From assembly GCF_006345805.1 (NCBI RefSeq), contig NC_042999.1, positions 54,250,001 to 54,314,000 on the forward strand: a stretch of 64,000 bases of DNA, written 5' to 3'. Both the position numbers and the translations under genes were made by a program. Shown piece after piece: positions 4,161 to 63,450 of this stretch. How positions within the stretch are numbered: position 1 is the stretch's first letter; each line of letters starts with the position of its first letter. The DNA is from Octopus sinensis (taxonomy: Eukaryota). The notes beneath the pieces are model-generated. The model saw only the letters and a program-made list of their open reading frames with translations, searched no databases and was not told the origin of the DNA.

Positions 4161-4384
4161 GTCAATTAGATTAAATAATATGTAAGTAATTAAGCGAATA
4201 ATTATTTCTTCATCTTCCCCCACCCGGTGCACTTTCATTTTCTGGATCACCTCAGGGAGAACAGGACTTGTATTGCCTTGTAACAATTCTAACAATTGGC
4301 CTGTAGCTATCTTAATTTCCATTAACTATCGGCTCGCCGCCAGTTTAATATATCAAATTGAGGACGAAAGCATTTAGAGCAACG

Positions 4385-4394
4385 ATAGAAAGAA

Positions 4395-4429
<35 letters not shown>

Positions 4430-4432
4430 TAA

Positions 4433-4521
<89 letters not shown>

Positions 4522-4552
4522 CAGGCAGAAAGACAGACAGACAGACAGACAT

Positions 4553-4589
<37 letters not shown>

Positions 4590-4598
4590 CAGGCAGAA

Positions 4599-4689
<91 letters not shown>

Positions 4690-4740
4690 CAGGCAGAAAG
4701 ACAGACAGACAGACAGATAGATAGATAGATAGATAGATAG
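4385..4740. repeat. Compound (GATA)n/(GACA)n microsatellite at the 3' end of Tx1 copy A
   Basis: Seen directly; the internal marker ggcagaaagacag recurs three times. Confidence 0.95.
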
Positions 4741-5713
4741 ATATGTTTCTTTATTAGCCACACAGGGCTGCACACAGATAGAACAAATTACAAGGTAGAG
4801 CTTTTCTTTTGAAGGTTAAAAAAAAAAAAAAAAAAAAAGGAAGGGGGAGTTTCGATCAAAAGGGATCGTAAAAGGAGAGAAAGAGGACAAAAAAAAGGGG
4901 GGTTAAAAAAAAAAAAAAAAAAAAAAGGGGGGGAGAGAGGAAAAAAAATTGATCAATAGGGATCGTTATCACAGAAATGTCAATATGAAGTGTAAAGGGG
5001 AGGACAGGTGAGGTTTACCCGTTGAAAGAAAAGCCTACGGAAAAGACCACGGTAACCTCGGTCAATGAAGTCACATTTTATATTTCTTTTTTTTTTTTTT
5101 TTTTTTTTGCAAATAAGCAACTCTCTGTTTTCGATTTCTGGGTTCATAGGACTATGCTCAAGGTGGCTTCGTCATTCATACGTGCCATTCTTGCTACATT
5201 CACCCATCTTTTTTTAAAACATTCGCTAGACAAAACTTGCCTCTCTACTCTCACTTTCCTTTTCAAGTGGTACTTGAAGAAGTTGATGAGAGATTGACCA
5301 GAGAGGAAAGTGTTTGTCTCCAATCCTTTCAGACGCGTCCACCAGATACATTCTTTCGCCATAGCCACAAGGATGATGAAAATAGCTCTTCCTTCCCGTT
5401 TGAAGGAAGGAGGCGTAACAATATTGACGATAGACTCAGCTGATAAACCGACTCGTCCCACACGTGACAGCAGTTGTTCGACATAAGCCCACAGGTCGGA
5501 AATTGTTGGACACTGAACGAGTGCGTGCAGAACGGTTTCGTCGCTCTGACCGCATCTCGGGCAGGTCGGCCCCGTGTTTCTCGAGCCGTGTCTGTAGAGC
5601 TTATCCCGAACGGGTAGCGCTTCTCGGTAGCACTGCCAGGCCAGGGATCTCTGGAAGTTGTCCATGGGCCCTGGCCCGAAAGTCGTCCCGAACAGGCGGG
5701 TCAGGTACTCCTC
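4741..5713 (-). mobile_element. Tx1-type non-LTR retrotransposon, 5'-truncated copy A (ORF2 C-terminus with CCHC-like zinc finger plus 3' UTR)
   Basis: ORF 5144-5752 contains CPRCGQSDETVLHALVQCP, homologous to 6773-7654. The 3' UTR ends AATAAAGAAACAT followed by (ATCT)n on the minus strand. Confidence 0.9.
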
Positions 5714-5715
5714 CC

Positions 5716-6296
5716 CCCGCCTGTTCGGGACGACTTTCGGGCCAGGGCCCATGAGACATTTCTGGCCTGGCAGTGCTACCGAGAAGCGCTACCCGTTCGG
5801 GATAAGCTCTACAGACACGGCTCGAGAAACACGGGGCCGACCTGCCCGAGATGCGGTCAGAGCGACGAAACCGTTCTGCACGCACTCGTTCAGTGTCCAA
5901 CAATTTCCGACCTGTGGGCTTATGTCGAACAACTGCTGTCACGTGTGGGACGAGTCGGTTTATCAGCTGAGTCTATCGTCAATATTGTCACGCCTCCTTC
6001 CTTCAAACGGGAAGGAAGAGCTATTTTCATCATCCTTGTGGCTATGGCGAAAGAATGTATCTGGTGGACGCGTCTGAAAGGATTTGGAGACAAACACTTT
6101 CCTCTCTGGTCAATCTCTCATCAACTTCTTCAAGTACCACTTGAAAAGGAAAGTGAGAGTAGAGAGGCAAGTTTTGTCTAGCGAATGTTTTAAAAAAAGA
6201 TGGGTGAATGTAGCAAGAATGGCACGTATGAATGACGAAGCCACCTTGAGCATAGTCCTATGAACCCAGAAATCGAAAACAGAGAGTTGCTTATTT

Positions 6297-6330
<34 letters not shown>
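5716..6330 (+). mobile_element. Inverted (fold-back) duplicate of Tx1 copy A
   Basis: Near-perfect reverse complement of 5087-5700, separated by a 15-nt loop (5701-5715). Confidence 0.9.
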
Positions 6331-6332
<2 letters not shown>

Positions 6333-6438
6333 GATAGATAGATAGATATGTTTCTTTATTAGCCACACAGGGCTGCACACAGATAGAACAAATTACAAGG
6401 TAGAGCTTTTCTTTTGAAGGTTAAAAAAAAAAAAATAA

Positions 6439-6470
<32 letters not shown>

Positions 6471-8885
6471 ATAAAATAAAATAAAAATAAAATAAAAAGG
6501 GGGGGTCGATCAAAAGGGATCGTAAAAGGAGAGAAAGAGGACAAAAAAGGAGGGGGGGGTAAAAAAAAGGGGGAGAGGAAAAAAATTGATCAATAGGGAT
6601 CGTTATCACAGAAATGTCAATATGAAGTGTAAAGGGGAGGACAGGTGAGGTTTACCCGTGGAAAGAAAAGCCTACGGAAAAGACCACGGTAACCTCGGTC
6701 AATGAAGTCAATGTTATATTTCTTTTTTTTTTTTTTTGCAAATAAGCAACTCTCTGTATTAATTTTTACGGTTCATAGAATCATAGTCAAGGTGGCTTCG
6801 TCATTCATACGTGCCATCCTTGCTACATTCAGCCATCTTTTTTTAAAACATTCACTAGACAAAACTTGCCTCTCTACTCTCACTTTTTTCTTCAAGTGAT
6901 ACTTGAAGAAGTTGATGAGAGATTGACCAGAGAGGAAAGTGTTTGTCTCTAATCCTTTCAGACGCGTCCACCAGATACATTCTTTCGCCATAGCCACAAG
7001 TATGATAAAAATAATTCTTCCTTCCCGTTTGAAGGAAGGAGGCGTGACGATATTAACGATAGACTCGGCTGATAAACCGACACGTCCCACACGTGACAGC
7101 AGTCGTTCGACATAAGCCCACAGGTGGGAAGTTGCTGGACACTGCACGATTGCGTGCAGAGCGGTTTCGTCGCTCTGCCCGCATCTCGGGCAGGTCGGCC
7201 CCGTGTTTCTCGAGCCATGCCTATAGAGCTTATCCCGAACGGGTAGCGCTTCTCGGTAGCACCGCCAGGCCAGGGATCTCTGGAAGTTGTCCATAGGTCC
7301 CGGGCCGAAAGTCGTTTGAAACAGGCGGGTCAGGTATTCCTCGTCGACGCCCAGGTTTGCCCCGAGCTCGTCGTCGTACCTCCCCTCCACTAATCCCCTA
7401 TAGAATGCTTTGGTTGTGTTGAAGTCACTCAAGGTCGACCCGGGACGGCAGAGTTGCTTGAGAGCAACGCGACACTCGCGGTGCCATTCGCCCTTCTTCG
7501 GCCTCTTTTTGATCCACGACTGTAGTTCGGTCATGGAGACGAGTTGCGGGAATGCGTGCCTCACAAACGGCGACCACACCTGTTCACCGTCGTCTACATA
7601 GAGCCGGAGATGTCGCAGTCTCAGCGCGTGTCTGCGCATCATCAACCACGGCATGCCCAGCCCTCATTTTAACGGGTGTTGACAGCAAATGGATCGCCTG
7701 ACCATCGGGACGCATCCTTTCCACAAGAAGCGGAAGAGGATGCGTTCTAGTTTGGTGATGGTAGGGTCGGGACAAGGTACGACGGTCAGGCGGTAGTAGA
7801 TGATGGACGCGATGTACGCGTTCACCACCTCCGCCCGACCTTTTAGGGACAGTTTCCTCTCGGCCCATTGCTGGGCGAGAGTGACCACCCTACTCATTAT
7901 CTCGTTCCAGTTCTTCTCCATTTGGAGGTCCGGACCGAACCAGACCCCGAGCAACTCAACCGGGCCGTCTGTCCAGCGTCCCACGACGGAGGTACTGGTG
8001 GACAGCATGGGCTTGCTTCTCCAGGTGCCGAGCCGCAAGCCCACTGACTTTTCCCGGTTGATTTTTGCTCCTGTCACCGCTTCGTAGTCTTTCAGTGTCT
8101 CGCCGACCCGCTCGATGTGCTCGTGGCTTGACACTATGACGGTGACGTCGTCCGCGTATGCAGACACGCTCGTCCCGCATCCTAATTCGCGCGGGATGCC
8201 CCTCAGAGTCGCCAGCTTCCGCAGTAGTGGCTCAAGAGTCAATACGTATAGAAGCGCCGAGAGGGGGCATCCCTGACGGACCGAACGTGCAATGTCGAAG
8301 GGTCTCGATAGATGTCCATTTACGCGAATTACCGAACGGATGCCTCTGTACAAGGCAGCTATCCAGCCGCGGAAGACGGGACCGAAACCAGCCGCTCTCA
8401 GGACTGCCTCCAAGTATCGATGGTCTACCCTATCAAAGGCTTTCGATTGATCCAAGTTGATCAGGGGCCCACCCATGCCAGGTTCGTTAACTACCCTGTC
8501 TATGATGTAGCGCATCAGATGGAGGTTGTCATGGATGCTCCGGCCCGGCACGGCGCACGTTTGTGCGTTGTCGACCAGTTTCTCCATGACAAGCGCCAAC
8601 CTCTTGGCTAACACCTTTTTCAAAATTTTCAGGTCTGCATTGAGCAGAGTGATTGGCCTAAAGTTATCTATAATGTTTCCCTTGTTTGGATCTTTCTTCA
8701 GCAGAGTTACAGCTCCTCGACTCACAAAACCGGGTATGCTCCCATTTTGCTGCCAGTTGCAGTATACCGCTGCCAAGACGTCTCCAAACAAGTCTGGCAT
8801 ACAATAGTAAAATTTGTAGGGTAGACCATCCAAACCCGGTGATTTGTCCCTCGAGCATTCTGCCATCGCTTCCCGCACTCCAGAA
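6331..8885 (-). mobile_element. Tx1-type non-LTR retrotransposon, copy C, 5'-truncated just upstream of the RT domain
   Basis: RT, zinc finger, 3' UTR and short (ATCT)n tail; no endonuclease domain or ORF1 present. Confidence 0.92.
6773..8878 (-). pseudogene. ORF2 fragment: reverse transcriptase plus C-terminal zinc finger, interrupted by one in-frame TGA (7664-7666)
   Basis: Motifs KSPGLDG, FRPITLLNAD, DQSKAFDRV, VRQGCPLS, YADD and CPRC..H..C. ORFs 7664-8878 and 6773-7654 are in the same frame (HPLK*GLGMPW). The first codon is GTG, not a true start. Confidence 0.93.
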
Positions 8886-12237: not shown

Positions 12238-12452
12238 GGGCGGCGAGCTGGCAGGATCGTTAGCACGCCGGGCGAAATATTGAGAGGTATTTCGTCTGCC
12301 GTTACGTTCTGAGTTCAAATTCCGATCAGGTCGACTTTGCCTTTCATCCTTTCGGTGTCGATTAAATAAGTACCAGTTACGCATTTAATCACTTTGTCTG
12401 TCCTTGTTTGTCCCCTTTATGCTTAGACCCTATGGGCAATAAAGAAATAAAT
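12238..12452 (+). mobile_element. SINE family S3
   Basis: ggcggcgagctggcaggatcgttagc...gagttcaaattcc...ctttcatcctttcgg...aataaagaaata; many copies in the window. Confidence 0.85.
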
Positions 12453-16908: not shown

Positions 16909-17496
16909 CCCACTTTTTTGCAGATGTTTATTCAAAACAAAGGCCACCAACTTGGGACGAGATAGCTAGGTGCCAGCGTCGTCACAGACATTGTTTTCAG
17001 AAGACTAAGAACCGCAACAGATTCCACATGGTATCTTACCCCACCCTCAAACAGTTCCACCAGCCTACCGTCCTCATCGACCTGAAAACGATGAAAGGCA
17101 AAGTTGACTGCAACAGTATTCAAACTCGAAAAGCGTCACAACAAATGTGAGTCCTTCCATCCAACGTTCTACCGATCCGGGCAATTTCCCGCCTAGTCCG
17201 GCTTTTAAGGAACTCTCTCTTCATACACACAACACATCACCATCTAACAGCATTTGTTTTACCATCTATAGAATTCTATCACAGACAAAATCCCTCATAA
17301 GTAATGTGTTGAATTTATTTTAAAAGCTGCAGTACTTGACTGGTTCTTTAATATATCGATCCGAAAGGATAAAAAGTAAAGCTCACCCCGTTGGTATTTG
17401 AACTATGAATGTGTAGAGCCACAACTAAATATCTCAAAATAATTTTGTGTAACCCTCCAACGATTTTAACCAGCCACCGTTCTGTTACTGAATATT

Positions 17497-17730
17497 GGGC
17501 GGCAAGCTGGTAGAATCGTTAGCACGTCGGGCGAAATGCTTAGCGGTATTTCGGCTGCCGTTACGTTCTGAGTTCAAATTCCTCCGAGGTCGACTTTGCC
17601 TTTCATCCTTTCGGGGCCAATAAATTAAGTACCAGTTACGCACTGGGGTCGATGTAACCGACTTAAGCTCTTTGTCTGTCCTTGTTTGTCTCCTCTGTGT
17701 TTAGCCCACTGTGGGCAATAAAGAAATATA
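17497..17730 (+). mobile_element. SINE S3
   Basis: Matches 12238-12452. Confidence 0.85.
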
Positions 17731-19622: not shown

Positions 19623-19754
19623 CAGGGCCGGCCCAAGGTACCGGCAACTCGGCCAGTCGCCCGGGGTGCATGTGATGGGGAGCGCCGAGGAGGCCGTCAC
19701 AAAGACAAGGAGTTCAGCTTGACCATGGCGCCAGCGACTCTGGGGCCGTCCCTG
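19623..19754. mobile_element. Short GC-rich element with terminal inverted repeats (possible MITE)
   Basis: cagggccggccc ... gggccgtccctg; no target-site duplication found. Confidence 0.35.
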
Positions 19755-19789
19755 GCCATAGAACAGGCCGAAGAACAACAACAACGACA

Positions 19790-20015
19790 AAAATGGTGAT
19801 GATGATGGTGATGATCATGATCATAACGATGATGATGCTCACGATAATGATTATGATAATGATTATGATGGTGATGACGACGACGACGACGACTACGACG
19901 ACGATGATGACAACGATGATGATTATGATGATGATGATGATGGGAGGAGGAGGAGGAGGAGGAGGAGGACGACGACGATGATGATTATGACGACGACGAC
20001 GACGATGACGACGAC

Positions 20016-20048
<33 letters not shown>

Positions 20049-20181
20049 AATGATGGGGGAGGAGGAGGAGGACGATGACGATGATGATTATGACGACGAC
20101 GACGACGATGACGACGATGATGATGATGATGATGATGATAATGATGGGGAGGAGGAGGAGGACGATGACGATGATGATTAT

Positions 20182-20222
<41 letters not shown>

Positions 20223-20226
20223 TGAC

Positions 20227-20263
<37 letters not shown>

Positions 20264-20275
20264 GTCATGATCATG
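19790..20275. repeat. Compound (GAT)/(GAC)/(GGA)n microsatellite with internal block duplication
   Basis: Seen directly. Confidence 0.95.
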
Positions 20276-24470: not shown

Positions 24471-25210
24471 GTTTCTGCATGCATAGATATGTTCCATCCT
24501 CCTTTCTTTATATTATGTAAGATATATTCTAGAGGCATTCTCATTTGTGAAGTACTTCACTTTTCTGCTGACTGAATTTCGCTCTTATTGGTTATCTCTC
24601 TTTGACTCGCATCGCTAAGAAAAGTTGCAGTGTATTACATCATTTTCTTTTTCTTTTTTTTTCTGTAATTTTAAATTATCACATTCACTGTTTTTGTTAA
24701 GTCTATTTGAAAAAAAAACACTTAACAACAAACAGGAAGGTTTTGGAAACGTTTTACGACATTTAAATTTTTCTTTTGCCGAAACGTTTTATGTATTCTA
24801 CCAATGCCCTTCATGCGCTCCTCTTGGAATACTAACAATACTGAAAATGGTCAATCGGTTGTTAAAATATACACACTGGAAAACATATTTAAACGAATTT
24901 TGTCCAAACCCAGAAAACGTGGGGAGGGATCGATAATCCGTACTCTGTCCTCTCTCAGTGGTTCAGAATAAAGAACACGCAAAATCCGGGTTTTTTTCTA
25001 ACAATTTAACACGGTAAAACGGAGGGTGGCGTTTAGGGTTCTCTGTGAATGAAATACGCCGGTTTAATAAAGAGGGTTTATATTGGCGTCCCTTAAATTC
25101 CATTTTTGCCAAACTGTCTGCGCCTGAACGTGTATAAACGAAGCAATAAATAAGACCCTTAATCGTAATTAGTAATGCGATATACATAATTTAGTTTTAT
25201 ACATTCTCAA

Positions 25211-25211
<1 letters not shown>

Positions 25212-25244
<33 letters not shown>

Positions 25245-25264
25245 TGATGATGATGATGATGATA

Positions 25265-25315
<51 letters not shown>

Positions 25316-25502
25316 GTGATGATGGTGATGATGATGATGGTGATGATGGTGATGATGGTGATGATGGTGATGGTGGTGACGATGGTGATGGTGGTGATGG
25401 TGGTGATGATGGTGATGATGGTGATGATGGTGACGATGGTGATGGTGGTGATGGTGGTGATGATGGTGATGGTGGTGATGATGGTGATGATGGTGATGAT
25501 GG

Positions 25503-25552
<50 letters not shown>

Positions 25553-25798
25553 GTGATGATGGTGATGATGATGATGGTGATGATGGTGATGATGGTGATG
25601 ATGGTGATGGTGGTGACGATGGTGATGGTGGTGATGGTGGTGATGATGGTGATGATGGTGATGATGGTGACGATGGTGATGGTGGTGATGGTGGTGATGG
25701 TGGTGATGATGGTGATGGTGGTGATGATGGTGATGATGGTGATGATGGTGATGATGATGATGATGAGGATGATGATGATGATGATGATGATAATAATA

Positions 25799-25850
<52 letters not shown>
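25212..25850. repeat. Compound (AAT)/(GAT)/(GGT)n microsatellite
   Basis: Seen directly; an internal block of ~240 bp is duplicated. Confidence 0.95.
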
Positions 25851-26108
25851 CAGTAAACGGTAGGCTTAATTTCAGCTTGGTGGAGTAATTAAAAAGTACT
25901 CTAATCGTTATAGAATCAATGTCAACCAAATTTATAGGAATTAGCAATTAGACAAAAATGTTTTAACTATAAAAACCTCAAGCATATCTATTTCTCACTG
26001 ATAATATTCCATTAAAATGTTTGTTTTAAGGGATGTGGGTTGATGGGGTTGGGGTGAATGGGACAGAGTTCATGACCATTACAAAAGCTAACAGCGAACC
26101 CAACTCAC

Positions 26109-34754: not shown

Positions 34755-36019
34755 TTGTGTGTATTAACCTGACTCTTTCTTACACACACACACACACACC
34801 TTTATACATATGTATGCATATTCCTAATTAGTAAGAGGGCAGAATGCGGGAAGATCGTTATTACATACGTCAGTAAAAAAATAAAACACTTCCAAAAATA
34901 AAATATCCTTTATGATGTAGATAAAAAGAAAAATCTGACGTTTCGGGAAGATTCCCATCATCAATGCGCTTTATCTAAATCATTGAGTTTCTCGTTTTCC
35001 TTTTGTCATGATATTTATTTCATCATTTTGAATTTCTGTTATATATTTTTGTAAATGATTTAGCATGGCGTTTTCCAGAGCTTGCGAGAAACATAATAGC
35101 ACAAAGTCTTCACGTTACCCAACTGTACCTGTTTTTTTTTCTTTGATAAATATACTCGCCCCTATTGTACTTTTATGCACCTAAATTTAGAGGGCACGTA
35201 TGTTAGTGTAAAGTATTTCCCATTGCTATATTCAGGCACGGCACCAAAGGAATGTTTAGTCTGGAGGTAGAGATAATTTCGAAACTGACATTCAAATTAC
35301 ATTCGCGTGAACGGTTTTAGCAGCAGCAATTAGAAGATAATCCAAAAACAACCACAGATGCTGTAGAAAAGTAGCTAAATCTTCCTCATCACGCTCCACC
35401 CTGTCTTAAATGAAAGGCAATCAGATAATTAACAATGGACTCCTAGATGTACTATGACAGACAAACTAAAAACGCGTTGGTCATGGTTGGAGATACTTTG
35501 AATGTATATCTGCTCGATAGCGGTAGATCTCAAGTAAACAAGTAAAATCGACAACAATAACAACAACATCAACAACAATACATTTCTCATCGTTGTTAAA
35601 TTATATATATACACGCATAAACATACACACGATTATAGAGATATACATACACATACAAACATGCATACATACGCACGTACATACATGTACATACATACAA
35701 ATTATTCTTATTGGATTATTATTATCTATCATTTCAGGAATTCCACAGATGCTGTGAAGAGATAACTGCAAAAGAGCAAAGATATAATACAAATATCTTA
35801 GATGTATTATTAGCCACTTTATATTCTCCTATCTACGCAAGCTGGGAGATTAAAACCAACAGATTTATCCCGAAGTTTGAGAAACTATTTATACTAAAGA
35901 GCTATAGTACTACTATTCGCTGGTTTACTATAAAACCTATAACACTAACACTGTTTGCTGGAGAATAATATTGGTTTCCAATTTTGGCACAAGGCCAGCA
36001 AGTTCGGCTGAGTGATCTT

Positions 36020-36160
36020 AGTCGATTCCATCGACGTCGACCTCGAAAAGATGAAAGGCAAAGTCGACCTCGACGGAATTTGAACTCAGAACGTCAAAAC
36101 AGACGAAATGTCACTTAACATTTTGCCCGGCGTTCTAATGTTTCAGCCAGCGCTCCGACC
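36020..36160 (-). mobile_element. SINE S3 5' part
   Basis: gatgaaaggcaaagtcgacctcgacggaatttgaactcagaacgt. Confidence 0.75.
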
Positions 36161-36545: not shown

Positions 36546-37779
36546 CCTATATATATATATATATTTTTTTTTTCCGAACTTTCGAATTTACGTTTTAAAC
36601 GGAATCAAACCTTTTCGTTCGGCGGCTTAAAGGGGTTATTTTTTGGAAGTAAAATTATTGGGTGTAATTATTAGTATGCCAATCGTGTCCCACCGGCAGC
36701 TTTCAAAATATTTTGTCCCCATCCATGTTCATTTTTTAAAACCAAATATTATTATCAGTTATCATTTAGTGTTGAATTTCTTTCGAAATACATCAATTTC
36801 TCATCACTAGTTCGGCATTTAAGATGAAGTGAACGATTCGCTGAAGAGGCTTAATTAAACCGAAATATGTCAGAAATTGTTTTGTGTTCTCACACCAAAC
36901 ATACGAGATAATGTCATCTTTTCGTCACTGCGTCAGTGTTTTTAGCTATATATTCAATATTCCTTACATTAAATATTTGATCTGTAATTGAACGATTGTA
37001 AGCTCAATACTGTGAGGAGAGAAACTCTGGAGGTACATCGTAAGTTCATTGTTGACAATAATGTTGAATTACAAAAGAAAGAAAAAAGCACGAATATTGC
37101 TCTGTAAAATATTTGGTTGTGACCAAGTATTTGCTGTGAACGTTAGATTTAGGATAGCCACATGTAAACGCCATCTCATTTACATCTGCTGTTTCAAGCT
37201 ATTAACCGTTACATCGAGTTTAAACTGTTTTAGAAATAAATCTGTTTCTGTAAATCTTCCACCTAATGGCATAAAAATGGTTCTACTTAGATCCGTTATT
37301 GTGGAATTTAATTCTTAATATTATTTCTTACTTTGTCACCAAGGAACTAGTCAGACATTCCTTGTCTGTCATTCGTCATGAAATGCATTACCAAAGAATG
37401 GTATAAGAACTTTATATAATGAATTTAGATTTCATTTCCTGTTTAGCATTTCGCAGTAAATATTAGTACCAAGGTTTTCTAGTGATGAGTAAGCACAATA
37501 ATTATGAGAACATTTCGTATATACTCTCTCTCTCTCTCTCTCTCTGAATCTGGTTATTACAACATTTACTTCTAATAGTTTCTTTTTTTCTTACGACTAT
37601 AGCTTTTTTTCGGTTTCACTGGTAAATGTATTTCGATTGTATGACAAACAAAATAAAGAATGGCATCGAGAAAATGGAGAATAAATTCAAGATATTAAAG
37701 GAGAAAAACAAATTTCAGTTTTTTTGTCACAACATAAGGTCATTACCAGAGTCATAGAGTGTTCGTTGGAAGACAAACG

Positions 37780-38560
37780 ACAGAGAACCATGTTACTATC
37801 GTTGATGAAATCCATTCTCGGGCCCGTATTCAGTGGATGGATTGCTGCAATGAACAGCGACATCTGTTCAGTGGTCGGAGTGAACGGTTACTTCTCGGAG
37901 CCATTCACCATTATGCGCTCGGTCCGCCAAAGTTAACCGCTCTCGTCCTTGTTGTACGTACTGACTCTCGAACCACTACTGCACAAACTGGAGCGTTGGA
38001 GGGGCATCCCGCATGAATATGCCAACGGTATCACCGTAATGGTGTTGAAAACCAAATACATTGTGATAATTGACCGCGCTCTCAGACAGTACGAAGCGGT
38101 ATCAGGAGCGAAAATTAACTAAGAAAATACAATGGGCTTACAACTCGATCCATAGAGAAGCAAGTCATGTTGTCCAACAGCATTGTTTGGCACTGGACGA
38201 ACGGGCCGTTTAAATTGCTCGGTGTATGGTTTGGTCCGGACCTCCAGGTGGACAAAAACTGAAACGAAGTAACAAGCTAAGTGGCTATCCTCACCCAAAA
38301 ATGGACCGAGAGGGAGCTATCCCTGAAAGATCGAGTAGAAGTGGCTAACAATTATATTACGTCCGTCATCTGCTACATGCTGACTGGAGCGTATAGTCTT
38401 TCGCTTCTTGGGGAAAGGTTATGCGTTCCCATGGTCAAGCGATCCATCTGTTGTCAACGCCTGCTGCATGGTGGACTGGTCATGTTATGGCTGATGATGC
38501 ATAAATATGCGCTGAGGTCATGATATTTCCAACTTTTTTTTATGATGAACAAGTGTGGTT
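37780..38560 (+). pseudogene. Degraded Tx1-type RT fragment
   Basis: LGPVFSGWIAAM...VNGYFSEPFTIMRSVRQ; WT.GPFKLLGVWFGPDLQ; LSLKDRVEVAN.YITSVI; VPMVKRSICCQ...GGL.M.WLMM. Colinear with 7664-8878 but with many lesions. Confidence 0.85.
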
Positions 38561-44642: not shown

Positions 44643-45082
44643 GAGATAGGAAACCATCGTCATTGTAATATGGTAAGAGGTTTGAAACCTCATTCTGTTC
44701 ATTCTAAAAAGAACATTGAGTTCGGGAGACAGGCGTTCGGCGGACGCCGCTCGTTTCCCTCATTCATATTTTTATATTCATTTCATCCCATTAATGTAAT
44801 TTTCCAGTCCGCAGTTACTCTATTTCATGCCCCTGTGGCAAATGGAAAAAAATAAAGTAGCTTGCTTACCAACCACATGGTTCTGGGTTCAGTCCCACTG
44901 CGTGGGACCTTGGACAAGTCCTTTCTTTTGTTAGAATCAAAATGAAAGCGAGGATGGCAAGAAAAGGGAATTAATTTCTTATTGATCCTAAAATATCCCA
45001 GTTCGGTTTTATTTTATTGTATATTACTGTGTCGTTTAAAGCTGTCATTCATATTTGCAATATTTTTGCTTCGATGAAAGCA

Positions 45083-45480
45083 GCAAGCTAGCAGAAACGT
45101 TAGCACGCCGGGCGAAATGCGTAGCCGTATTTCGTCTGCCGTTACGTTCTGAGTTCAAACTCCGCCGAGGTCGACTTTGCCTTTCATCCTTTCGGAGTCG
45201 ATTAATAAAATACCAGTTACGCACTGGGGTCGATGTAATCGACTTAATTCGTTTGTCTGTCCTTGTTTGTCCCCTCTGTGTTTAGCCCCTTGTGGGTAGT
45301 AAAGAAATATGCATTTTATCTATCGCTACGTTCTGAGTTCAAATTCCGCCGAAGTCGACTTTGCCTTTCAGCTTTTCGGCGTCGATAAATTAAGTACCAG
45401 TTGCCTACTGGAGTCAATCAAATCGACTGGCCCCTCCCCCAAATTTCGGGCATTGTGCCAATAGTAGAAAAGAATATTTT
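45083..45480 (+). mobile_element. Tandem S3 SINEs with two alternative tails
   Basis: Full copy ending gccccttgtgggtagtaaagaaata, then a partial copy ending aatcgactggcccctcccccaaatttcggg...agaaaagaat. Confidence 0.85.
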
Positions 45481-46822
45481 TGCTTTGTTTTCTGCAATTA
45501 AGGAATATCACTGTAGCAACTACTAACTGGACTTTAGTACCGCAACAGTTCCTTCAAGAATTTTCTACTCTGGTGGGAATATATTTTGTCTGTCTGCACG
45601 TTTAAATTTTCCATGTTCGGTAACGATCTCAAACCGTTAACCGTTTTGGTTCTCTTTGGGTCTCTGGCTTTCTGAATCATAGAATACCATTTCATTGATT
45701 AGTCATTCCATTATCTCAAGAAGTCCCTTTTTTCTAAACCAACACCCTCGAAATTTATCAACGCCGGTAGCTTACCCCAATGATTATTTCGACTGATTTA
45801 TCTTCTCTCTTCTAACAAAACAAAATCTGATTGGTTGTTATTTACAAGTTGTAATTTATTCAGCAACCATTTACATTTTTGTGGTTTCTTCTATCCCTCA
45901 TTATTTTGTCCTCATATTTCCTTGCAATAATGGTTACATTCTTCACATCTGACATTTATATTCTTGTTCTTCCTGTTTATCTCTTAATAAAACCGATCAC
46001 GGATGACCTGAAATTCAACAACAGCCACAACCACAGCAACAAAACGCATTTTTTTCTTTCGTTTTGTTTGCCGTGTCTCTATCATTGTACCATTTGTTGA
46101 AATCTAAATTTTGTTGTTTGTGCCATAAACTTGTTTAAAGTTCTTATGTATCGAGGGTCCGTGCTTTTTCAAAACATTTTCTTTCCCTCTGATATAGACC
46201 CACTCATCCTTCAGGTTATTTATTTACGATAAACTCTTTACAAATTCCCATCTCCCTCCGCCCTCCTCTATCTCTTTCTCTTTTCGTTTGGTTGTTATTC
46301 TGTTTAAATCCTCAATTCCGCATTTATATTCATTCGAAGTATTTCTCTTCATCTGTTTTGCTTTATTATTTCATTTAATACTTATTCTTTGCAATGGGAG
46401 GAATCGTGAGAGCAGCCACTCGGTATCGATACAATAACCTACCAGTCAAGTACTACGGTCGATGCACTGCGCTAATCCCCCACCCAAAACTGCTGGCCTT
46501 GTGCCTAAATTAGAAACCCTTAAGATGGCGGGATGGCAGAATCGTTAGCGCATCGAACAAAATACTCAGCGACATTTCTTCCGGCTCTATACGTTCTGAT
46601 TTCCAATACCGCCGAATTTTACTTCATCACTCCTCATACCAACCTCGGTATTATCGACTGATCCCATTTCCCTCAAAGTTGATGGCCAAGCGCCAAAGCT
46701 TAAAACCATTATTTCCAAGACGTCATTTCTCTAAACACTGCATGTGTAACAATACAATATTCCTGGCATTCAAAGGCGGCGAGCTGGCAGAAACGTTAGC
46801 ACGCCGGGCGAAATGCTTAGCG

Positions 46823-50644: not shown

Positions 50645-51135
50645 GGGAAAGCGGTGAGCTAGCAGAGTCGTTAGCACGCCGGGCGAAATGCTTACCGGTA
50701 TTTCGCCAGCCGTTACGTTCTGAGTTCAAATTCTGCCGGGGTCGACTTTACCTTTCATCCTTTCGAGGTCGATTAAATAAGTACCAGTTATGCACTGGAG
50801 TCGATGTAATCGACTTAATACCTATGTCTGTCCTTGTTTGTCCCCTCTATATTTAGCCCCTTGTGGGTAATAAAGAAATAGAAATAGGTATTTCGCCAGC
50901 CGTTACGTTCTGAGTTCAAATTCCGCCGGGGTCGACTTTGCCTTTCATCCTTTCGGGGTCGATTAAATAAGTACAAGTTACGCACTGGGGTCGATATAAT
51001 CAACTTAATACGTTTGTCTGTCCATGTTTGTCCTCTCTGTGTTTAGCTCCTTGTGGGTAGTAAAGAAATAGGTATTTCGCCAGCCGCTACCTTCTGAGTT
51101 CAAATTTTTTCCGAGGTCAGCTTTACCTTTCATCC
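50645..51135 (+). mobile_element. Three head-to-tail S3 SINE units
   Basis: Units restart at ggtatttcgccagccg (~50697, ~50887, ~51071); an inverted head fragment follows at ~51135-51168. Confidence 0.85.
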
Positions 51136-51194: not shown

Positions 51195-51470
51195 ATTCTT
51201 TTTATTGGCCACAAGGGCTGACAAACATGATTGGAAAACATAAAGGGACAAAACAGGACGAAAGGTTACAAAAGGTTTTGTCCGCTTTTTCGAAAGAAAA
51301 AAGTCCGTGTAAACAAGCTTTACAACAACGAAAAAATTCAACAATTTACAATACTCCCAATAGAGGTCCGCTTCGAAAAAAAGAAAAGGTCTCACGTGGA
51401 AAACCCATAAAAGCCACGGGAGCCTGGTCAAAAGGGGGGTAGAGAGCCCCTTTCTCCTTTTATAATACCT
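51195..51470 (-). mobile_element. 3' UTR of a second Tx1-type subfamily (B) with (ATT)n tail
   Basis: Sense tgaccaggctcccgtggctttt...ttttccacgtgagacc resembles the copy A UTR; ends cagcccttgtggccaataaaaagaa followed by (att)n. Confidence 0.6.
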
Positions 51471-51966
51471 TTTGCAATTACAGTAATCCTTTCTACAATA
51501 GGCACAAGGCCTGGAATTTGTAGGGTGGGGGCTAGCGGTATTTTTGTGCCGCGACATTCTGTGTTCATATTCCGCCGAGGTCACCTTTGCCTTTCATCCT
51601 TTCGAGGTCGATAAATTAAGTACTCAGGGGTCGATATAATGGACTAGTCCCTTCCGCCAAAAATTCAAGCCTTTGTATCTTCGGTAGAAAGGTATTATGA
51701 CTCTCAACGGGAGACAAAACAACAACAACACAGGCTTCAAAAAACATTTCTTGGAGAAATAGATAGAAAGGAAAGGCTTTGGCGGGAAAATATGTCACGT
51801 TTGTAAAAGGCGGTGGTGGTGGTGGTGACGGTTGCAGTTATGTTCGGTTGTCGGTGATGGACGTAGTAAAGTTACCCCCACCATCTCCACCACTCTGTGG
51901 CAATACTTTACACTCACTCTATATCTATCTGTCATTCTTACGTCTCCATTTTTCTATTTCTCTACC

Positions 51967-52152: not shown

Positions 52153-52342
52153 TGTGTTTGTGTGTCTGTGTTTGACCCCCTAGCATTGCTTGACAACCGA
52201 CGCTGGTGTGTTTACGTCCCCGTCACTTAGCGGTTCGGCAAAAGAGACCGATAGAATAAGTACTGGGCTTACAAAGAATAAGTCCCGGGGTCGATTTGCT
52301 CGACTAAGGGCGGTGCTCCAGCATGGCCGCAGTCAAATTACT
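51967..52342 (+). mobile_element. SINE S2, essentially full length
   Basis: ggagtggctgtgtgg head, ggttcagtccc B box, internal (TA)/(TG) tract, tail ggcggtgctccagcatggccgcagtc...gaaacaagtaaaagag. Confidence 0.9.
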
Positions 52343-52847
52343 GAAACAAGTAAAAGAGTAATCTATCTACTTCCCCCCAACAGAAGTAACACACACACAC
52401 GCTCACACACACATATATATATATACACACACATATATACATACACATTACAACATAAGAACAAAACAAATCTAGCGACTGCCTTCATTCTCGTTCTCCC
52501 TTCTCCTCTCTCTCTCTCTCTTTTTCTCTCCCTCCCTCTCTGTCATGCCCTCACACTGTACCTCGCTGATCTTTTCCTCATATTCTCTTCTTTTGCACTA
52601 CTTTCACTCTGTCTCTCTCTCTTTCCCTGTCTGTCTCAAGAGTTATTTCGTCCTCGTTCCGAAATGTCTATCTATCTACCTATCAATCAATTTATCTATT
52701 TACCTACCTACCTACCTACCTACCTACCTACCTACTTATATATCTATCTACCAGTCTATTTATCTATTCATCTACCTATCTATTTATCTATCTATCTATC
52801 TATCTACCTATGTATTTATTTATCCATCTATCGATCCATCTATCTAT

Positions 52848-53151
52848 GTGACCTCATTGACCGAGGTTACCGGGGTCTTTTCCTAGACTTTTCTTTCCAC
52901 AGGAAAACCTCACTTGTCCTCCCCTTTACACTTTATATTGACATTTCTGTGATAACGATCCCTATTGATCGATTTTTTCTTTTTCCTTTTATTTTATTTT
53001 ATTCCCCTCCATTTTTTTTTGTTTTCCTCCTTCTTTCTTTTTACGATCCCATTTGATCGAAAACCAAACCCCCATTTTATCCCCAAAAGAAAAGCTCTAC
53101 CTTGTAATTTGTTCCGTCTTTGTACAGCCCTGTGTGGCTAATAAAGAAACA

Positions 53152-53152
<1 letters not shown>
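52848..53152 (+). mobile_element. 3'-UTR-only copy of Tx1 subfamily A inside an (ATCT)n array
   Basis: Matches the reverse complement of 4741-5075; (TATC)-type repeats on both sides (~52670-52845, 53151-53320). Confidence 0.9.
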
Positions 53153-53222
<70 letters not shown>

Positions 53223-53768
53223 ATATCTGTTTGTGTGTCTGTCTGTCTGTCTGTCTGTCTGTCGGTCTATCTATCTATCTATTTATCTGTCTATCTACTT
53301 TCTATCTATCTATCTGTATATATATATATCTCAAAATTCAATATATAATCATTTATGATTATAGTATTCTACGCTGAAGAGAAAAGAAGTTTCGGTAAGA
53401 TAGAATTATTTAATATTTAATATTTAATTCTTATGCTTTCCTAAAAACTTGATTTCGAAACGTACGTCCGTGGATAACTAAAAAAATGTATGATAGATTG
53501 CAGTCAATTCATTCTCTCTTACCTGTTTGTGTCTGCCTTCCAAATGCTGTTTTTACTGAGATCTCCCTTTTTAGTAGAAGAAATAGCTATACCACCCTTT
53601 GACTGCTATTTCTAAATTCGGTATGTGGTAAGGCAACTCGTTGCTAAACCCTTATTGCTTAGTATTACTTAAATTTTCCTCGAATGAGGCTTTTACATGC
53701 CGAAGACTACTTGGTGTAATTGATAATTTTTCCAAATTAATTGATTTCACCCTTCATTATTACGGATA

Positions 53769-57698: not shown

Positions 57699-57759
57699 CA
57701 TATGCGAATGTATTTGTTTCTTTATTGTACATAGAGGGAACAACGAAGGACAGACAAAA

Positions 57760-57900
57760 GAATTAAGTCGATTACATAGTCCCCGAAAGGATGAAAGGCA
57801 CAGTCAAACTCGGCGGAATTTGAACTCAGAACGTAACGGCAGACGAAATACCGCTAAGCATATCGCCCGGCGTTCTAACGTTTCTGCCAGCTCGCCATCC
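57760..57900 (-). mobile_element. SINE S3 5' part
   Basis: Reverse complement of the S3 head. Confidence 0.8.
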
Positions 57901-58789
57901 AATTAAAATAAAAGGGGACACACAATTGATTCCATCACTACATGATCACGGTTGATGTTGCTACCCCTTCTCATACGTTCTGCTATTGGTTGTGCTTCCA
58001 CTGCGGCGAGATATTTTACGGTTATTTGATCCTTGTTCCTAAACTTATGCTAAAGAAATAAGCAAATTACAAAACTTGACATCTTCCTAATTATTTGTCC
58101 TGTTCTTCCTTCAGTTCTTGAATCCTGCAATTCAGTAACTTTTGGGGACATTTGTAACCGTCGATCATATTCTTTCTTCATCACACGCAACCGAATAACG
58201 CAGTGCTTACAGCGCTGCCTGGGTTTAGCAATCCTCCGTCCCACATTCCTTTCTTGGGAAGTAGAGGCTAACGATATCACTCTTAGGGTGATACACGTTG
58301 AGTATTTTGAGCAGCTTGCTAGTTCTTTTTAAGTTCTGTACCTCTGTCTTAGTCCGTTATAAAAAAAAAGGAGGAGAGCATCTCATTACTGCATCGTCCA
58401 TGCATTCATTCATCTGATAATATTCCTTTCCTTTAATTTTGTTTCGAGTTCCGTAATTTTTCTCTTGTACTCTTTATAGATTTTAACCTTCATTTTTCTT
58501 TCCATTGCCTTCTCGCCTTGCAGTACCATTAGAAACTTTTACCCTTCACAATATCTCAGCGATATAATCATCTTTCATCTTGCGCACCCTCTTCATAACT
58601 GTAACTACCCTTGATCACCATAACCTGCATACCAACATACTTGCTAAATATTCTTACGATTTCCACAATCCAGGTATTTTTGTCATCGTCATCATCGTCA
58701 TCATCATCGTTATCATCATTATCATCATCATCATTATTATCATCGTCATCATCGTCATCATCGTCATTATTATTATTTTAAAAAGTTTT

Positions 58790-62001: not shown

Positions 62002-62685
62002 ATATATAATATATATACATATATATACATGCACCCGCACGTGCATACATACGCACACGCATACGCACGTAGATACATATATACGTACGTACATACGTGC
62101 AGACATGCATAGTCATACATACATACATACATACATATGAACATGTCTAGGTATGCAACTATAAGCATGAGAAGACATACATAAAACAAAACATAGGAAT
62201 CTGCACGTATACATACATTCAAGCAAAAATGCCCTGTTGATGCTGTGCAAATCCCAATGAAGGAGCCCTGAATCTCATATCAAGATAAACAGCGCATGAC
62301 CTTGCAGGTGGGGCCCAGTTAGAATTTTCTTCTGGTCGAGTAACCCATCCCGCTTAAAAGGTCCCTGAATAAGGGTTGTTTAAAGATGTTGAACAAAATA
62401 CCCATGTTTCCAAAGGTGAATTATCCAAACCCCAAAGAGTTCCTTTCAATACATGGCTATGATACTCCTCCACTGCTTCTGCTCATGATCAGAAATGTAC
62501 GTATTGGTAGCCACTAAGGAACATGCTCAACTAGTTATGGTCAAGCAACTGAAAAGCAAATCTGTGGTATTGAGCAGAATATTTGCTGTAGCCCATCTTT
62601 TATATCAAGACAAAACAAGGTACATGATAATACGTGAAAAGACATGAGAGTCACTCTCTCATTGTTATTATTATTTTTACTATTA

Positions 62686-62751
<66 letters not shown>

Positions 62752-63183
62752 GCATGAGGACAGATACATTCCTCTATGGTAGAGCTCTCGTTGACTTCAA
62801 GTTTCACTTGAAAAAGAAATTGAGAGTGGAGAGGGAAGTGCTGTCCTTGTGTGAATTTATTGAAAGGTGGGTAAAAGTTGCGAAAATGGCAAGAGTGGAT
62901 AGCACCTCTCTAAGTGTAGATCTTTGAGTCGGAGAGGGCACTTGCTCCTAGGATTTCAGGGAAATCTCGGACAGTGGGGTTCCTCGATTATCCCGAGAAG
63001 CGTTCCTGTATCAGGAGGACCACATCTCTATTATCCTCCCCGCCATTTTTGTTACCTTGCTATGCTAGACCGTATATACTTACCTTTTTTTATATCATTT
63101 CATAATATGCAAACCTCAACACTTTATGTCTGTCTTTATATTGTCCCCCTCATCCTACGCCCTTGTGGCAAATAAATTAAATC
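62752..63183 (+). mobile_element. 3' end of a third Tx1-type subfamily (C) inside an (ATT)n array
   Basis: RTDTFLYGRALVDF.KFHLKKKLRVEREVLS...RWVKVAKMARV aligns with the copy A/C C-terminus; unrelated UTR body, ending cgcccttgtggcaaataaa; (ATT)n on both sides. Confidence 0.85.
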
Positions 63184-63224
63184 ATTATTATTATTATTAT
63201 TATTATTACTATTCTTAACATTAA

Positions 63225-63450
63225 GGCAGTGAGCTGGCAGAATCGTTAGCACGCTGGACGAAATGCGTTGCTGTATTTCGCCCGACGCTGCGTTCTGAGT
63301 TCAAATTCCGCCGAGGTCGACTTTGCCTTTCATCTTTTCGGGGTCGATAAATTAAGTGCCAGTTGTATACTGGGGTCGATCTAATCGACTGGGCCCCCAC
63401 CCCTCATCAAAAAATTTCGGGCCTTGTACCTAGAGTAGAAACGAATATTT
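63225..63450 (+). mobile_element. SINE S3, full length, second tail type
   Basis: Head ggcagtgagctggcagaatcgttagc; tail aatcgactgggcccc...tttcgggccttgtacctagagtagaa. Confidence 0.85.

What the first reader, a model, noticed from the sequence alone, without database searches (positions are those of the whole stretch)
12395..12452. SINE S3 tail matches the Tx1 3' end, a candidate Tx1-mobilised SINE
The S3 tail tgtctgtccttgtttgtcccct...agcccc-tgtgggcaataaagaaa (also 17668-17728, 45252-45308, 50825-50880) aligns with Tx1-B gtcctgttttgtcccttt...cagcccttgtggccaataaaaagaa, Tx1-C tgtctgtctttatattgtccccct...gcccttgtggcaaataaa and Tx1-A cagccctgtgtggctaataaagaaac. All keep a small GCC(C)/(G)GGC hairpin just before AATAAA. 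Shared SINE/LINE 3' tails mark the mobilising partner (established), but L1-group enzymes are usually regarded as tail-relaxed.
Basis: partly seen in the sequence, partly recalled or inferred. Interest (0 to 1): 0.7.

Follow-up and report, generated by a model that had tools for sequence, protein, structure and literature searches.

The report
Octopus SINE borrows Tx1 LINE tail
A short parasitic repeat (SINE) in this octopus-type genome ends in about 55 bases copied from the 3' end of a Tx1-type LINE, including a small conserved hairpin. That LINE family is therefore the likely enzyme donor that spreads the SINE, which is a new example of a well-known arrangement.

Summary
Five S3 SINE copies in the window end in a ~55-60 nt tail. 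This tail aligns, in register with the 3' terminus, to the 3' ends of LINE copies in the same window (z = 5.7-10.8 against 2000 shuffles). A profile built only from LINE tails finds all five SINE tails.

The LINE carries RT and zf-RVT domains. Its RT scores 217 bits against Xenopus Tx1 ORF2 and 127 bits against human L1 ORF2p, so it lies on the Tx1 side of the L1 group.

Argonauta hians repeats the pattern independently. Its Deu-type SINEs and its related LINEs share a ~60 nt tail at about 85% identity (z = 17-22).

The GC hairpin with a CUUGU loop is kept in 23 distinct tails. Its three inner pairs are always paired, and two of them occur in both orientations.

None of the three LINE families in the window is the exact donor; an (ATT)n-tailed relative fits best. 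"Tx1-B" has no coding part. Trans-mobilisation is inferred, not shown.

A second SINE tail type in the window (S1) matches the 3' end of a more distant Tx1-like LINE.

Verdict: a new member of the known SINE/LINE shared-tail kind, with an unusual partner clade. Interest is moderate.

The parts
12238..12449 (+). S3 SINE copy. It has an internal deletion and a partly degraded hairpin. The tail is 12390-12449. Candidate 12-bp target-site duplication TATYAAGAAYTG.
17495..17728 (+). S3 SINE copy. The tail is 17669-17728. Candidate 9-10 bp target-site duplication (A/T)ATATTGGGC. The element ends at GAAATA.
45078..45309 (+). S3 SINE copy. The tail is 45250-45309, with hairpin GCCC.CTTGT.GGGT. A 5'-truncated S1-type SINE follows.
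50649..50880 (+). S3 SINE copy. The tail is 50821-50880 and the terminal GAAATA unit is doubled.
50887..51070 (+). 5'-truncated S3 copy, part of a 190-bp tandem unit. The tail is 51011-51070.
57729..57902 (-). Degraded S3 copy. An internal deletion has removed the hairpin.
6346..8878 (-). It is 5'-truncated and contains an RT ORF (7664-8878), a C-terminal zf-RVT ORF (6773-7654) and a 3' UTR. The tail at 6349-6408 ends ...AGCC.CTGTGT.GGCTAATAAAGAAACAT(ATCT)4.
4744..5713 (-). LINE-A copy holding the C-terminal coding part and the 3' UTR. The tail is 4744-4803, followed by (ATCT)n at 4384-4743.
52848..53151 (+). LINE-A copy, 3' UTR only. It sits inside an (ATCT)n microsatellite (52667-52847 and 53152-53331).
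62752..63183 (+). It holds the last ~59 codons of ORF2 (68% identical to P0002, read through to the stop) and the 3' UTR. It lies inside an (ATT)n microsatellite (62661-62751 and 63184-63217). The tail is 63122-63181.
51195..51470 (-). It is non-coding, ~270 bp, and ends ...AGCC.CTTGT.GGCCAATAAAAAGAA followed by an (ATT)-like run. Only its last ~40 nt resemble LINE 3' UTRs.
45417..45480 (+). Example of the other SINE tail type, S1: CCCCTCCCCCAAATTTCG GGC.ATTGT.GCC AATAGTAGAAAAGAATATT. It has the same loop with stem GGC/GCC. Further copies are near 46460-46520, 63390-63450, 51470-51545(-) and 35960-36030(-).

Best explanation
S3 is a subfamily of the abundant octopod SINE. The SINE has a tRNA-like head with A/B-box-like motifs and a conserved 'Deu-like' body. 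The last ~55-60 nt of S3 are a copy of the 3' end of a Tx1-clade (L1-group) LINE lineage.

Proposed mechanism:
1. S3 is transcribed from its own internal promoter. The four full-length copies examined contain no run of four or more T, which fits Pol III transcription.
2. Its 3' end mimics the LINE RNA. It carries a 3-4 bp GC hairpin with a CUUGU loop, placed about 12 nt from the terminus, followed by AAUAAAGAAAU(A).
3. The LINE ORF2 protein (APE, RT and a C-terminal zinc motif) recognises this tail in trans. It then copies the SINE RNA into the genome by target-primed reverse transcription, leaving ~10-12 bp target-site duplications.

Shown here:
- The tail homology, in register with the termini.
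- Placement of the LINE on the Tx1 side of the L1 group.
- Conservation of the hairpin, with limited covariation.
- The same SINE/LINE tail pairing in a second octopod genus.

Inferred, not shown:
- Recognition of the hairpin by ORF2p.
- Trans-mobilisation.
- Which LINE family is the donor. It is probably an (ATT)n-tailed family like LINE-C, P0002 or Argonauta P0125, and it is not present in the window.
For: - Tail similarity: z = 5.7-10.8, and 0 of 2000 shuffles reach the observed score.
- A LINE-only profile finds all five S3 tails, aligned to the profile end.
- The S3 consensus aligns over 54 nt to the tail of an Argonauta LINE that has its own ORF (P0125, L069 3642-3689, followed by (ATT)n); z = 11.6.
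- In Argonauta, three Deu-type SINE copies carry a tail about 85% identical to the LINE tail in L001 5591-5649, over 39-64 aligned nt (~60 nt in two of the three copies), including the terminal GAAATCTATT; z = 17-22. The SINE tail therefore tracks the LINE tail in each genus.
- LINE identity: RVT_1 at 8e-33 and zf-RVT. The best PDB relative is L1 ORF2p, ahead of R2. Against Xenopus Tx1 ORF2 (P0202) the RT scores 217 bits, against 127 bits for human L1. With L1 as outgroup, Tx1 nests among the relatives.
- Hairpin: in 23 distinct tails the pairs are CG:23; CG:12/GC:10/UG:1; and GC:19/CG:4, with none unpaired. The covariation score is 0.449 against 0.153 +/- 0.039 in shuffles (0 of 500 reach it), and slid controls score 0.17 or less.
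- The four full-length S3 copies contain no T run of 4 or more, whereas several LINE tails do.
- Candidate 10-12 bp target-site duplications flank two copies.
- Pairwise identities of S3 copies (79-89%) and LINE-A copies (79-87%) overlap.
Against: - No experiment links the LINE protein to the SINE.
- No LINE in the window has a tail matching S3 better than about 72-80%.
- The terminal repeats differ. The LINEs end in (ATCT)n or (ATT)n, while S3 ends in GAAATA with at most one extra unit.
- S3 copies are not inside microsatellites, whereas two LINE copies are. A shared target preference is therefore not seen.
- Hairpin covariation traces back to only two or three evolutionary events. Single-sequence folding energies are not significant (z = -0.2 to -2.3).
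- The 12k copy has a degraded hairpin and the 57.9k copy has lost it. These may simply be decayed copies.
- No library of the other LINE clades of this genome (RTE, CR1, Dong-R4) could be searched for a better tail match.
Confidence: 0.75

Rival explanations
1. The tail was copied once from a Tx1-type LINE and is a relic of S3's origin. S3 is actually mobilised by a different LINE, or by a LINE with relaxed recognition, so the shared tail does not mark the current partner.
For: - The terminal repeats of S3 and of the LINEs differ, and no exact donor is present in the window.
- Octopus genomes hold several abundant and active LINE clades: RTE, Dong-R4 and CR1 (PMC13282606).
Against: - The tail is held at 80-89% identity among S3 copies, like the rest of the element.
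- The SINE tail differs between Octopus-type and Argonauta copies in the same way as the LINE tails do, covering the hairpin stem and the terminal GAAATA versus GAAATCTATT. This is expected if the tail keeps being matched to the LINE.
Confidence: 0.12
2. The direction is the reverse. The LINE lineage captured its 3' end from a SINE, or both took it from a third source. The shared module is then a general 3'-end signal (hairpin plus AAUAAA) rather than a LINE-specific recognition site.
For: - AATAAA is the canonical polyadenylation signal.
- The module occurs on several SINE types and on elements of unknown type in Argonauta.
Against: - The hairpin, with its CUUGU loop and A-rich end, is present in LINE lineages whose ORF2 is only 44-52% identical, including a full-length LINE in tandem arrays from another organism. 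It is therefore old in the LINE lineage.
- S3-type and S1-type SINEs share the body and differ in the tail. The tail is thus the exchanged module on the SINE side.
Confidence: 0.08
3. The similarity is chance or compositional: a T-rich stretch followed by an A-rich stretch.
For: - The tails are of low complexity in part.
- Folding z-scores of single sequences are weak.
Against: - 0 of 2000 dinucleotide shuffles reach the observed scores.
- 11 pattern matches occur against 0.06 expected.
- The LINE-only profile hits exactly the S3 termini.
- The pattern is replicated in Argonauta at z = 17-22.
Confidence: 0.01

Closest known systems
Stringent-type SINE/LINE pairs with a shared 3' tail (for example eel UnaSINE1/UnaL2; Ohshima and Okada's list of 58 pairs, PMC3747384)
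   Same: - The SINE has its own promoter region, plus a 3' module of ~55-60 nt homologous to the very 3' end of a LINE in the same genome.
- A small stem-loop lies close to the terminus.
- 5'-truncated copies and target-site duplications are present.
   Different: - The partner belongs to the Tx1 clade, which is absent from that list. The listed pairs are mostly CR1/L2 and RTE.
- The terminal simple repeat is not shared. The LINEs end in (ATCT)n or (ATT)n, while S3 ends in GAAATA.
L1-clade LINEs with a conserved 3' stem-loop shared with SINEs (maize/sorghum LINE1-1_ZM with ZmSINE2/3; Chlamydomonas L1-1_CR with SINEX-3_CR; Ohshima 2012, PMC3472496)
   Same: An L1-group enzyme is paired with a SINE through a shared, structured 3' end. 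This contradicts the idea that the whole L1 group is tail-relaxed.
   Different: - Those cases are plant and algal L1-clade elements ending in poly(A) or (T)n.
- Here the element is an animal (cephalopod) Tx1-clade LINE ending in microsatellite repeats.
SINEU mobilised by Tx1-Mar in crocodilians (Kojima 2015, PMC4494074)
   Same: A SINE is proposed to depend on Tx1-clade LINEs.
   Different: - That inference rested on a shared insertion target (Mariner-N4_AMi) and shared snRNA-derived 5' heads. No LINE with a similar 3' half was found.
- Here the evidence is the shared 3' tail, and no shared target preference is seen.
Microsatellite-targeting Tx1 elements (Kibi, Koshi; crocodilian Tx1 families in (TTCC)n/(TTTC)n; Kojima and Fujiwara 2004, as cited in PMC4494074)
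   Same: Two 5'-truncated LINE copies in the window lie inside a microsatellite with the same unit and orientation as their own tail: (ATCT)n and (ATT)n.
   Different: - The repeat units are different.
- With only two copies, insertion into an older copy's tail cannot be told apart from true target specificity.

Membership tests
SINE/LINE pair with shared 3' tail (stringent type) | The 3' end of the SINE is homologous to the 3' end of a LINE of the same genome, in register with the terminus. | tested here: met
   z = 5.7-10.8 against shuffles. The LINE-only profile retrieves all S3 tails, aligned to the profile end. Replicated in Argonauta.
SINE/LINE pair with shared 3' tail (stringent type) | The partner is an autonomous LINE encoding an endonuclease and a reverse transcriptase. 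| tested here: inconclusive
   RT and zf-RVT are present in the window copy, but that copy is 5'-truncated and has no APE domain. Relatives found with the profile carry PF03372 plus PF00078 plus PF13966.
SINE/LINE pair with shared 3' tail (stringent type) | A conserved stem-loop lies in the shared tail. | tested here: met
   The inner three pairs are 100% paired in 23 distinct tails, and two of these pairs occur in both orientations. 0 of 500 shuffles reach the covariation score. RNAalifold keeps the 4-bp hairpin. Weakness: few independent events, and single-sequence folding z-scores are not significant.
SINE/LINE pair with shared 3' tail (stringent type) | The SINE and the LINE share the same terminal simple repeat. 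| tested here: not met
   The LINE tails continue into (ATCT)n or (ATT)n. The S3 copies end at GAAATA with at most one extra GAAATA or AATA unit.
SINE/LINE pair with shared 3' tail (stringent type) | The SINE has an internal Pol III promoter (a tRNA-derived head). | tested here: inconclusive
   ARAGORN and Rfam find nothing. A/B-box-like motifs (TGGCAGAATCG, GAGTTCAAATTCC) are visible by eye. The four full-length copies have no T run of 4 or more.
SINE/LINE pair with shared 3' tail (stringent type) | Trans-mobilisation of the SINE by the LINE that depends on the tail. | not testable with these tools
   This needs a retrotransposition assay.
Tx1 clade of non-LTR retrotransposons | The RT groups with Tx1 rather than with L1 or other clades. 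| tested here: met
   phmmer with the same query and the same Z gives 217 bits against Xenopus Tx1 ORF2, 127 bits against human L1 ORF2p and ~72 bits against R2. Identity is 35% against 26%. In an NJ tree rooted on L1, Tx1 sits among the relatives. Limits: only one Tx1 and one L1 reference were used, and no RTclass-style phylogeny with all clades was made.
Tx1 clade of non-LTR retrotransposons | Target-specific insertion, which is frequent in the clade but not universal. | tested here: inconclusive
   LA_53k lies inside (ATCT)n and LINE-C inside (ATT)n, in each case the same unit and orientation as the element's own tail. Only two informative copies are available.
SINEU-like Tx1 dependence (shared target preference) | The SINE and the LINE insert into the same target sequence. 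| tested here: not met
   The flanks of the S3 copies are ordinary unique sequence or other SINEs, not (ATCT)n or (ATT)n.
DeuSINE superfamily | A central Deu domain. | not tested
   The body (…CTTTGCCTTTCATCCTTTCGGGGTCGATAAATTAAGTACCAG…) resembles the Deu domain from my memory only. tRNA-Deu is the largest classified SINE class reported in O. vulgaris. No reference sequence was available for comparison.

The most novel reading that the evidence does not exclude
Both SINE tail types in the window (S3 and the more common S1) derive from 3' ends of one deep Tx1-like LINE lineage. That lineage's hallmark is a GC hairpin with a CUUGU loop close to an A-rich terminus. If so, the octopod-specific SINE expansion (about 12% of the O. 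vulgaris genome) was driven by Tx1-clade enzymes that recognise their template stringently. This would be the first animal L1-group case of stringent 3'-end recognition with SINE partners.
Probability: 0.4. Interest if true: 0.65.

Novelty: new member of a known kind. Interest (0 to 1): 0.5.

Why it matters
SINEs are the largest retroelement fraction of Octopus genomes and have been linked to their genome reshuffling. Yet recent annotations leave most of them 'unclassified' and name no LINE partner (PMC13282606; PMC8967140). Identifying a Tx1-clade partner through a shared, structured tail would do three things:
- It would name the enzyme source for that expansion.
- It would add an animal example to the few L1-group LINEs that appear to need a specific 3' end.
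- It would offer a compact RNA element (a 4-bp stem with a CUUGU loop) that can be tested directly by mutation and compensatory rescue.

Tried and rejected
- **Public collection scans.** Exact-pattern scans of genome contigs and viral contigs for the shared tail found nothing. More copies from the source genome could therefore not be obtained.
- **RNA gene searches.** Rfam at gathering thresholds and ARAGORN found nothing in the window. Rfam also found nothing in the tandem LINE arrays, so those arrays are not insertions into a known RNA gene.
- **Extended lower stem.** A lower stem (UCUGUGU pairing with AAUAAAGA) appears in many single-sequence folds. RNAalifold does not keep it, and the z-scores are weak. 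I do not claim it.
- **Element B as a LINE.** Its similarity to LINE UTRs is confined to the tail.
- **S1/S3 stem 'flip' as one clean double compensatory change.** It can equally be read as the insertion of one C-G pair next to the loop (GGC/GCC becoming GGCC/GGCC). The number of independent events is small.
- **Tandem S3 copies (50697-51135) as evidence of tail-targeted insertion.** The identical truncation point in both repeats points to a tandem duplication instead.
- **Short contigs.** L003, L008 and L009 end before the LINE tail. L010 has only a degenerate motif.

Full report
**What the window is.** The 64 kb window is AT-rich (38.7% GC) and packed with interspersed repeats and microsatellites. 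Its LINE proteins have their best matches in octopods: 68% identity to an Argonauta hians protein, and 95% over a short stretch to an Octopus bimaculoides protein. It is therefore octopod genomic DNA. The species was not determined.

**The observation.** There is also one 5'-truncated copy (50887-51070) and one degraded copy (57729-57902, minus strand).
- All share a head and body with a second, more frequent SINE type in the window, which I call S1.
- After ...AATCGACT the two types diverge.
- S3 continues with TAANNCNTTTGTCTGTCCTTGTTTGTCCCCTCTGTGTTTA GCCC.CTTGT.GGGY AATAAAGAAATA and ends there.
- The tail is thus an exchangeable module.

**Is the similarity more than chance?** Yes.
- The core pattern has 11 matches in the window against 0.06 expected.
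- The S3 tail consensus aligns to the last 60 nt of each in-window LINE tail with z = 5.7-10.8, and 0 of 2000 dinucleotide shuffles reach the observed score. Only a handful of 5000 random natural 60-mers from the window reach the weaker scores.
- The cleanest test used an nhmmer profile built from seven LINE tails only. It retrieves the five S3 tails as the next-best hits in the whole window (E = 3.5e-6 to 0.02). Each hit runs to the last profile position, so it is in register with the 3' terminus.

**What the LINEs are.**
- LINE-A (6346-8878, minus strand) encodes RVT_1 (8e-33) and a C-terminal zf-RVT zinc motif. It is 5'-truncated, so no endonuclease domain is present in the window.
- Among solved structures its RT matches human L1 ORF2p (127 bits) well ahead of R2 (about 72 bits).
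- A profile search recovered the Swiss-Prot Xenopus Tx1 ORF2 (P0202). With the same query and database size, the LINE-A RT scores 217 bits against Tx1 (35% identity over 397 residues) and 127 bits against L1 (26%).
- In a small neighbour-joining tree rooted on human L1, Tx1 sits among the relatives of LINE-A.
- I therefore place the family on the Tx1 side of the L1 group. This rests on one reference per clade.
- Published annotations list L1-Tx1 as a major and recently active LINE group in Octopus.
- LINE-C (62752-63183) carries the last ~59 codons of ORF2, 68% identical to P0002 and read through to the stop, so it is a genuine 5'-truncated LINE.
- Element B has no coding part and resembles LINE UTRs only in its last ~40 nt. 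Its status as a LINE is unproven.

**Tails and targets of the LINEs.**
- LINE-A ends ...AATAAAGAAACAT followed by (ATCT)n.
- LINE-C, element B and the related metagenomic element L002 end in (ATT)n.
- LA_53k lies inside an (ATCT)n tract, and LINE-C inside an (ATT)n tract. In both cases the unit and orientation match the element's own tail.
- This fits the microsatellite targeting known for some Tx1 elements (PMC4494074). With two copies it is only suggestive.
- S3 copies are not in such tracts. Two of them show candidate 10-12 bp target-site duplications, and they end at GAAATA, once doubled.

**Independent replicate.** Two Argonauta hians loci fetched through LINE proteins (L001, L069) contain several copies of the same tail.
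- Three copies sit at the end of LINEs. One belongs to ORF P0001. One is a 3'-UTR-only copy. One belongs to ORF P0125 and is followed by (ATT)n.
- Three further copies sit at the end of SINEs with the same Deu-like body.
- The Argonauta SINE tail and LINE tail are about 85% identical over 39-64 aligned nt (~60 nt in two of the three copies), including the terminal GAAATCTATT (z = 17-22).
- The P0125 LINE tail is the best match found for the window's S3 tail (54 nt, z = 11.6).
- In each genus the SINE tail therefore resembles the local LINE tails. This is expected if the tail is functionally matched to the LINE.

**The hairpin.**
- In 23 distinct tails the loop-closing pair is C-G in all. The set comprises S3, S1, octopod LINEs, Argonauta SINEs and LINEs, and the distant LINE described below.
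- The next pair is C-G in 12, G-C in 10 and U-G in 1. The third pair is G-C in 19 and C-G in 4. None is unpaired.
- The fourth pair is A-U, G-U, G-C or U-A in 16 tails and mismatched in 7.
- The covariation score is 0.449, against 0.153 +/- 0.039 in column shuffles (0 of 500 reach it). Slid controls score 0.17 or less.
- RNAalifold on the S3-type set keeps exactly this 4-bp hairpin.
- Limits: the changes map to two or three events, and part of them can be read as insertion of one base pair. Single-sequence folding energies are unremarkable. A longer lower stem seen in single folds is not supported comparatively.

**A wider pattern, found in passing.**
- The genome-contig scan returned 58 loci, and almost all come from one MAG labelled Arenicella. 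These contigs are in fact tandem arrays of a full-length Tx1-like LINE. It has APE, RT and a zinc motif, its RT is 52% identical to LINE-A, and it scores 325 bits against Tx1 versus 252 bits against L1.
- Its 3' end reads ...CCCCTCCCCAAAAACTTCAA GGC.CTTGT.GCC. A second hairpin follows, whose stem sequence differs among subfamilies but stays complementary, and then AAATAAAG.
- The leader and the first hairpin match the S1 SINE tail of the window (26 of 31 positions, z = 8.7).
- Both SINE tail types in the window thus point to the same LINE lineage.

**Comparison with what is known.**
- Shared SINE/LINE tails are textbook. The 58 pairs listed by Ohshima include no Tx1 partner, but they do include L1-clade partners in maize/sorghum and Chlamydomonas.
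- Tx1-dependent SINEs (SINEU) were proposed from shared targets. No shared 3' tail was found for them.
- Surveys of mollusc SINE partners report Nimb, CR1, I and L2, and no Tx1.
- I found no paper naming a partner LINE for the octopus SINEs. Repbase entries could not be checked.

**Verdict.** It is a new member of a known kind with an unusual partner clade. Mobilisation, and the role of the hairpin in it, remain to be shown.

Noticed in passing
window 45417-45480, 46460-46520, 63390-63450, 51470-51545(-), 35960-36030(-); loci L011-L068 near position 4900-4990: The second SINE tail type (S1: CCCCTCCCCCAAATTTCG GGC.CTTGT.GCC TAGAGTAGAAAAGAATATT) matches the 3' UTR end of a distant Tx1-like LINE from another organism (26 of 31 positions, z = 8.7). 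It has the same CUUGU loop with stem GGC/GCC.
   Followed up: partly
L011-L062, L064, L068 (contigs CAXXMW0100000xx): Contigs of a MAG labelled 'uncultured Arenicella sp.' consist of tandem arrays (period ~6.4 kb) of a full-length eukaryotic Tx1-like LINE (ORF2 of 1156 aa). This looks like mis-binned eukaryotic DNA. No Rfam RNA gene lies in the repeat unit. P0124, labelled Herbaspirillum MAG, likewise looks like octopod LINE sequence.
   Followed up: partly
L013-L068, about 35 nt before the LINE 3' end: In that distant LINE, a second hairpin of 6-9 bp precedes AAATAAAG. Its stem sequence differs between subfamilies but stays complementary (for example UCUGUGUA/UACACAGA, UCAUUGUA/UACAAUGA, UCCUG/CAGGA). 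Single-sequence folding gives z = -2.3 to -3.4 in most variants.
   Followed up: partly
window 50697-51135: A 190-bp unit is repeated 2.3 times. After a full S3 copy come 5'-truncated S3 copies that start at the same base, GGTATTTCG. The identical junctions suggest tandem duplication rather than repeated insertion.
   Followed up: partly
window 5716-6317(+): An inverted fragment of the LINE-A C-terminal coding region abuts the 5' end of the LA_4.7k copy head to head. An A32 run (6299-6330) follows, and then the tail of the next LINE-A copy. The origin of this arrangement is not resolved.
   Followed up: no
window 37685-38550(+): A decayed internal RT fragment of a second LINE of the same group (37-53% identical to LINE-A and P0002). 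It has no 3' end.
   Followed up: partly
window 44823-44851: ...CATGCCC.CTGT.GGCAAATGGAAAAAAATAAAG is a weak hit of the LINE-tail profile (E = 0.016). The element it belongs to is unknown.
   Followed up: no
L001 7235-7276(-), 6886-6939(-); L069 5312-5348: Further Argonauta elements of unknown type, not the Deu-type SINE and with no ORF nearby, end in the same hairpin-plus-AATAGAGAAATC tail. The tail module seems to be shared by several non-autonomous families.
   Followed up: no
window 19714-20274, 25207-25947, 52190-53056: Long ORFs here are artefacts of (ATG)n and similar microsatellites or of low-complexity sequence. They have no Pfam hits.
   Followed up: yes
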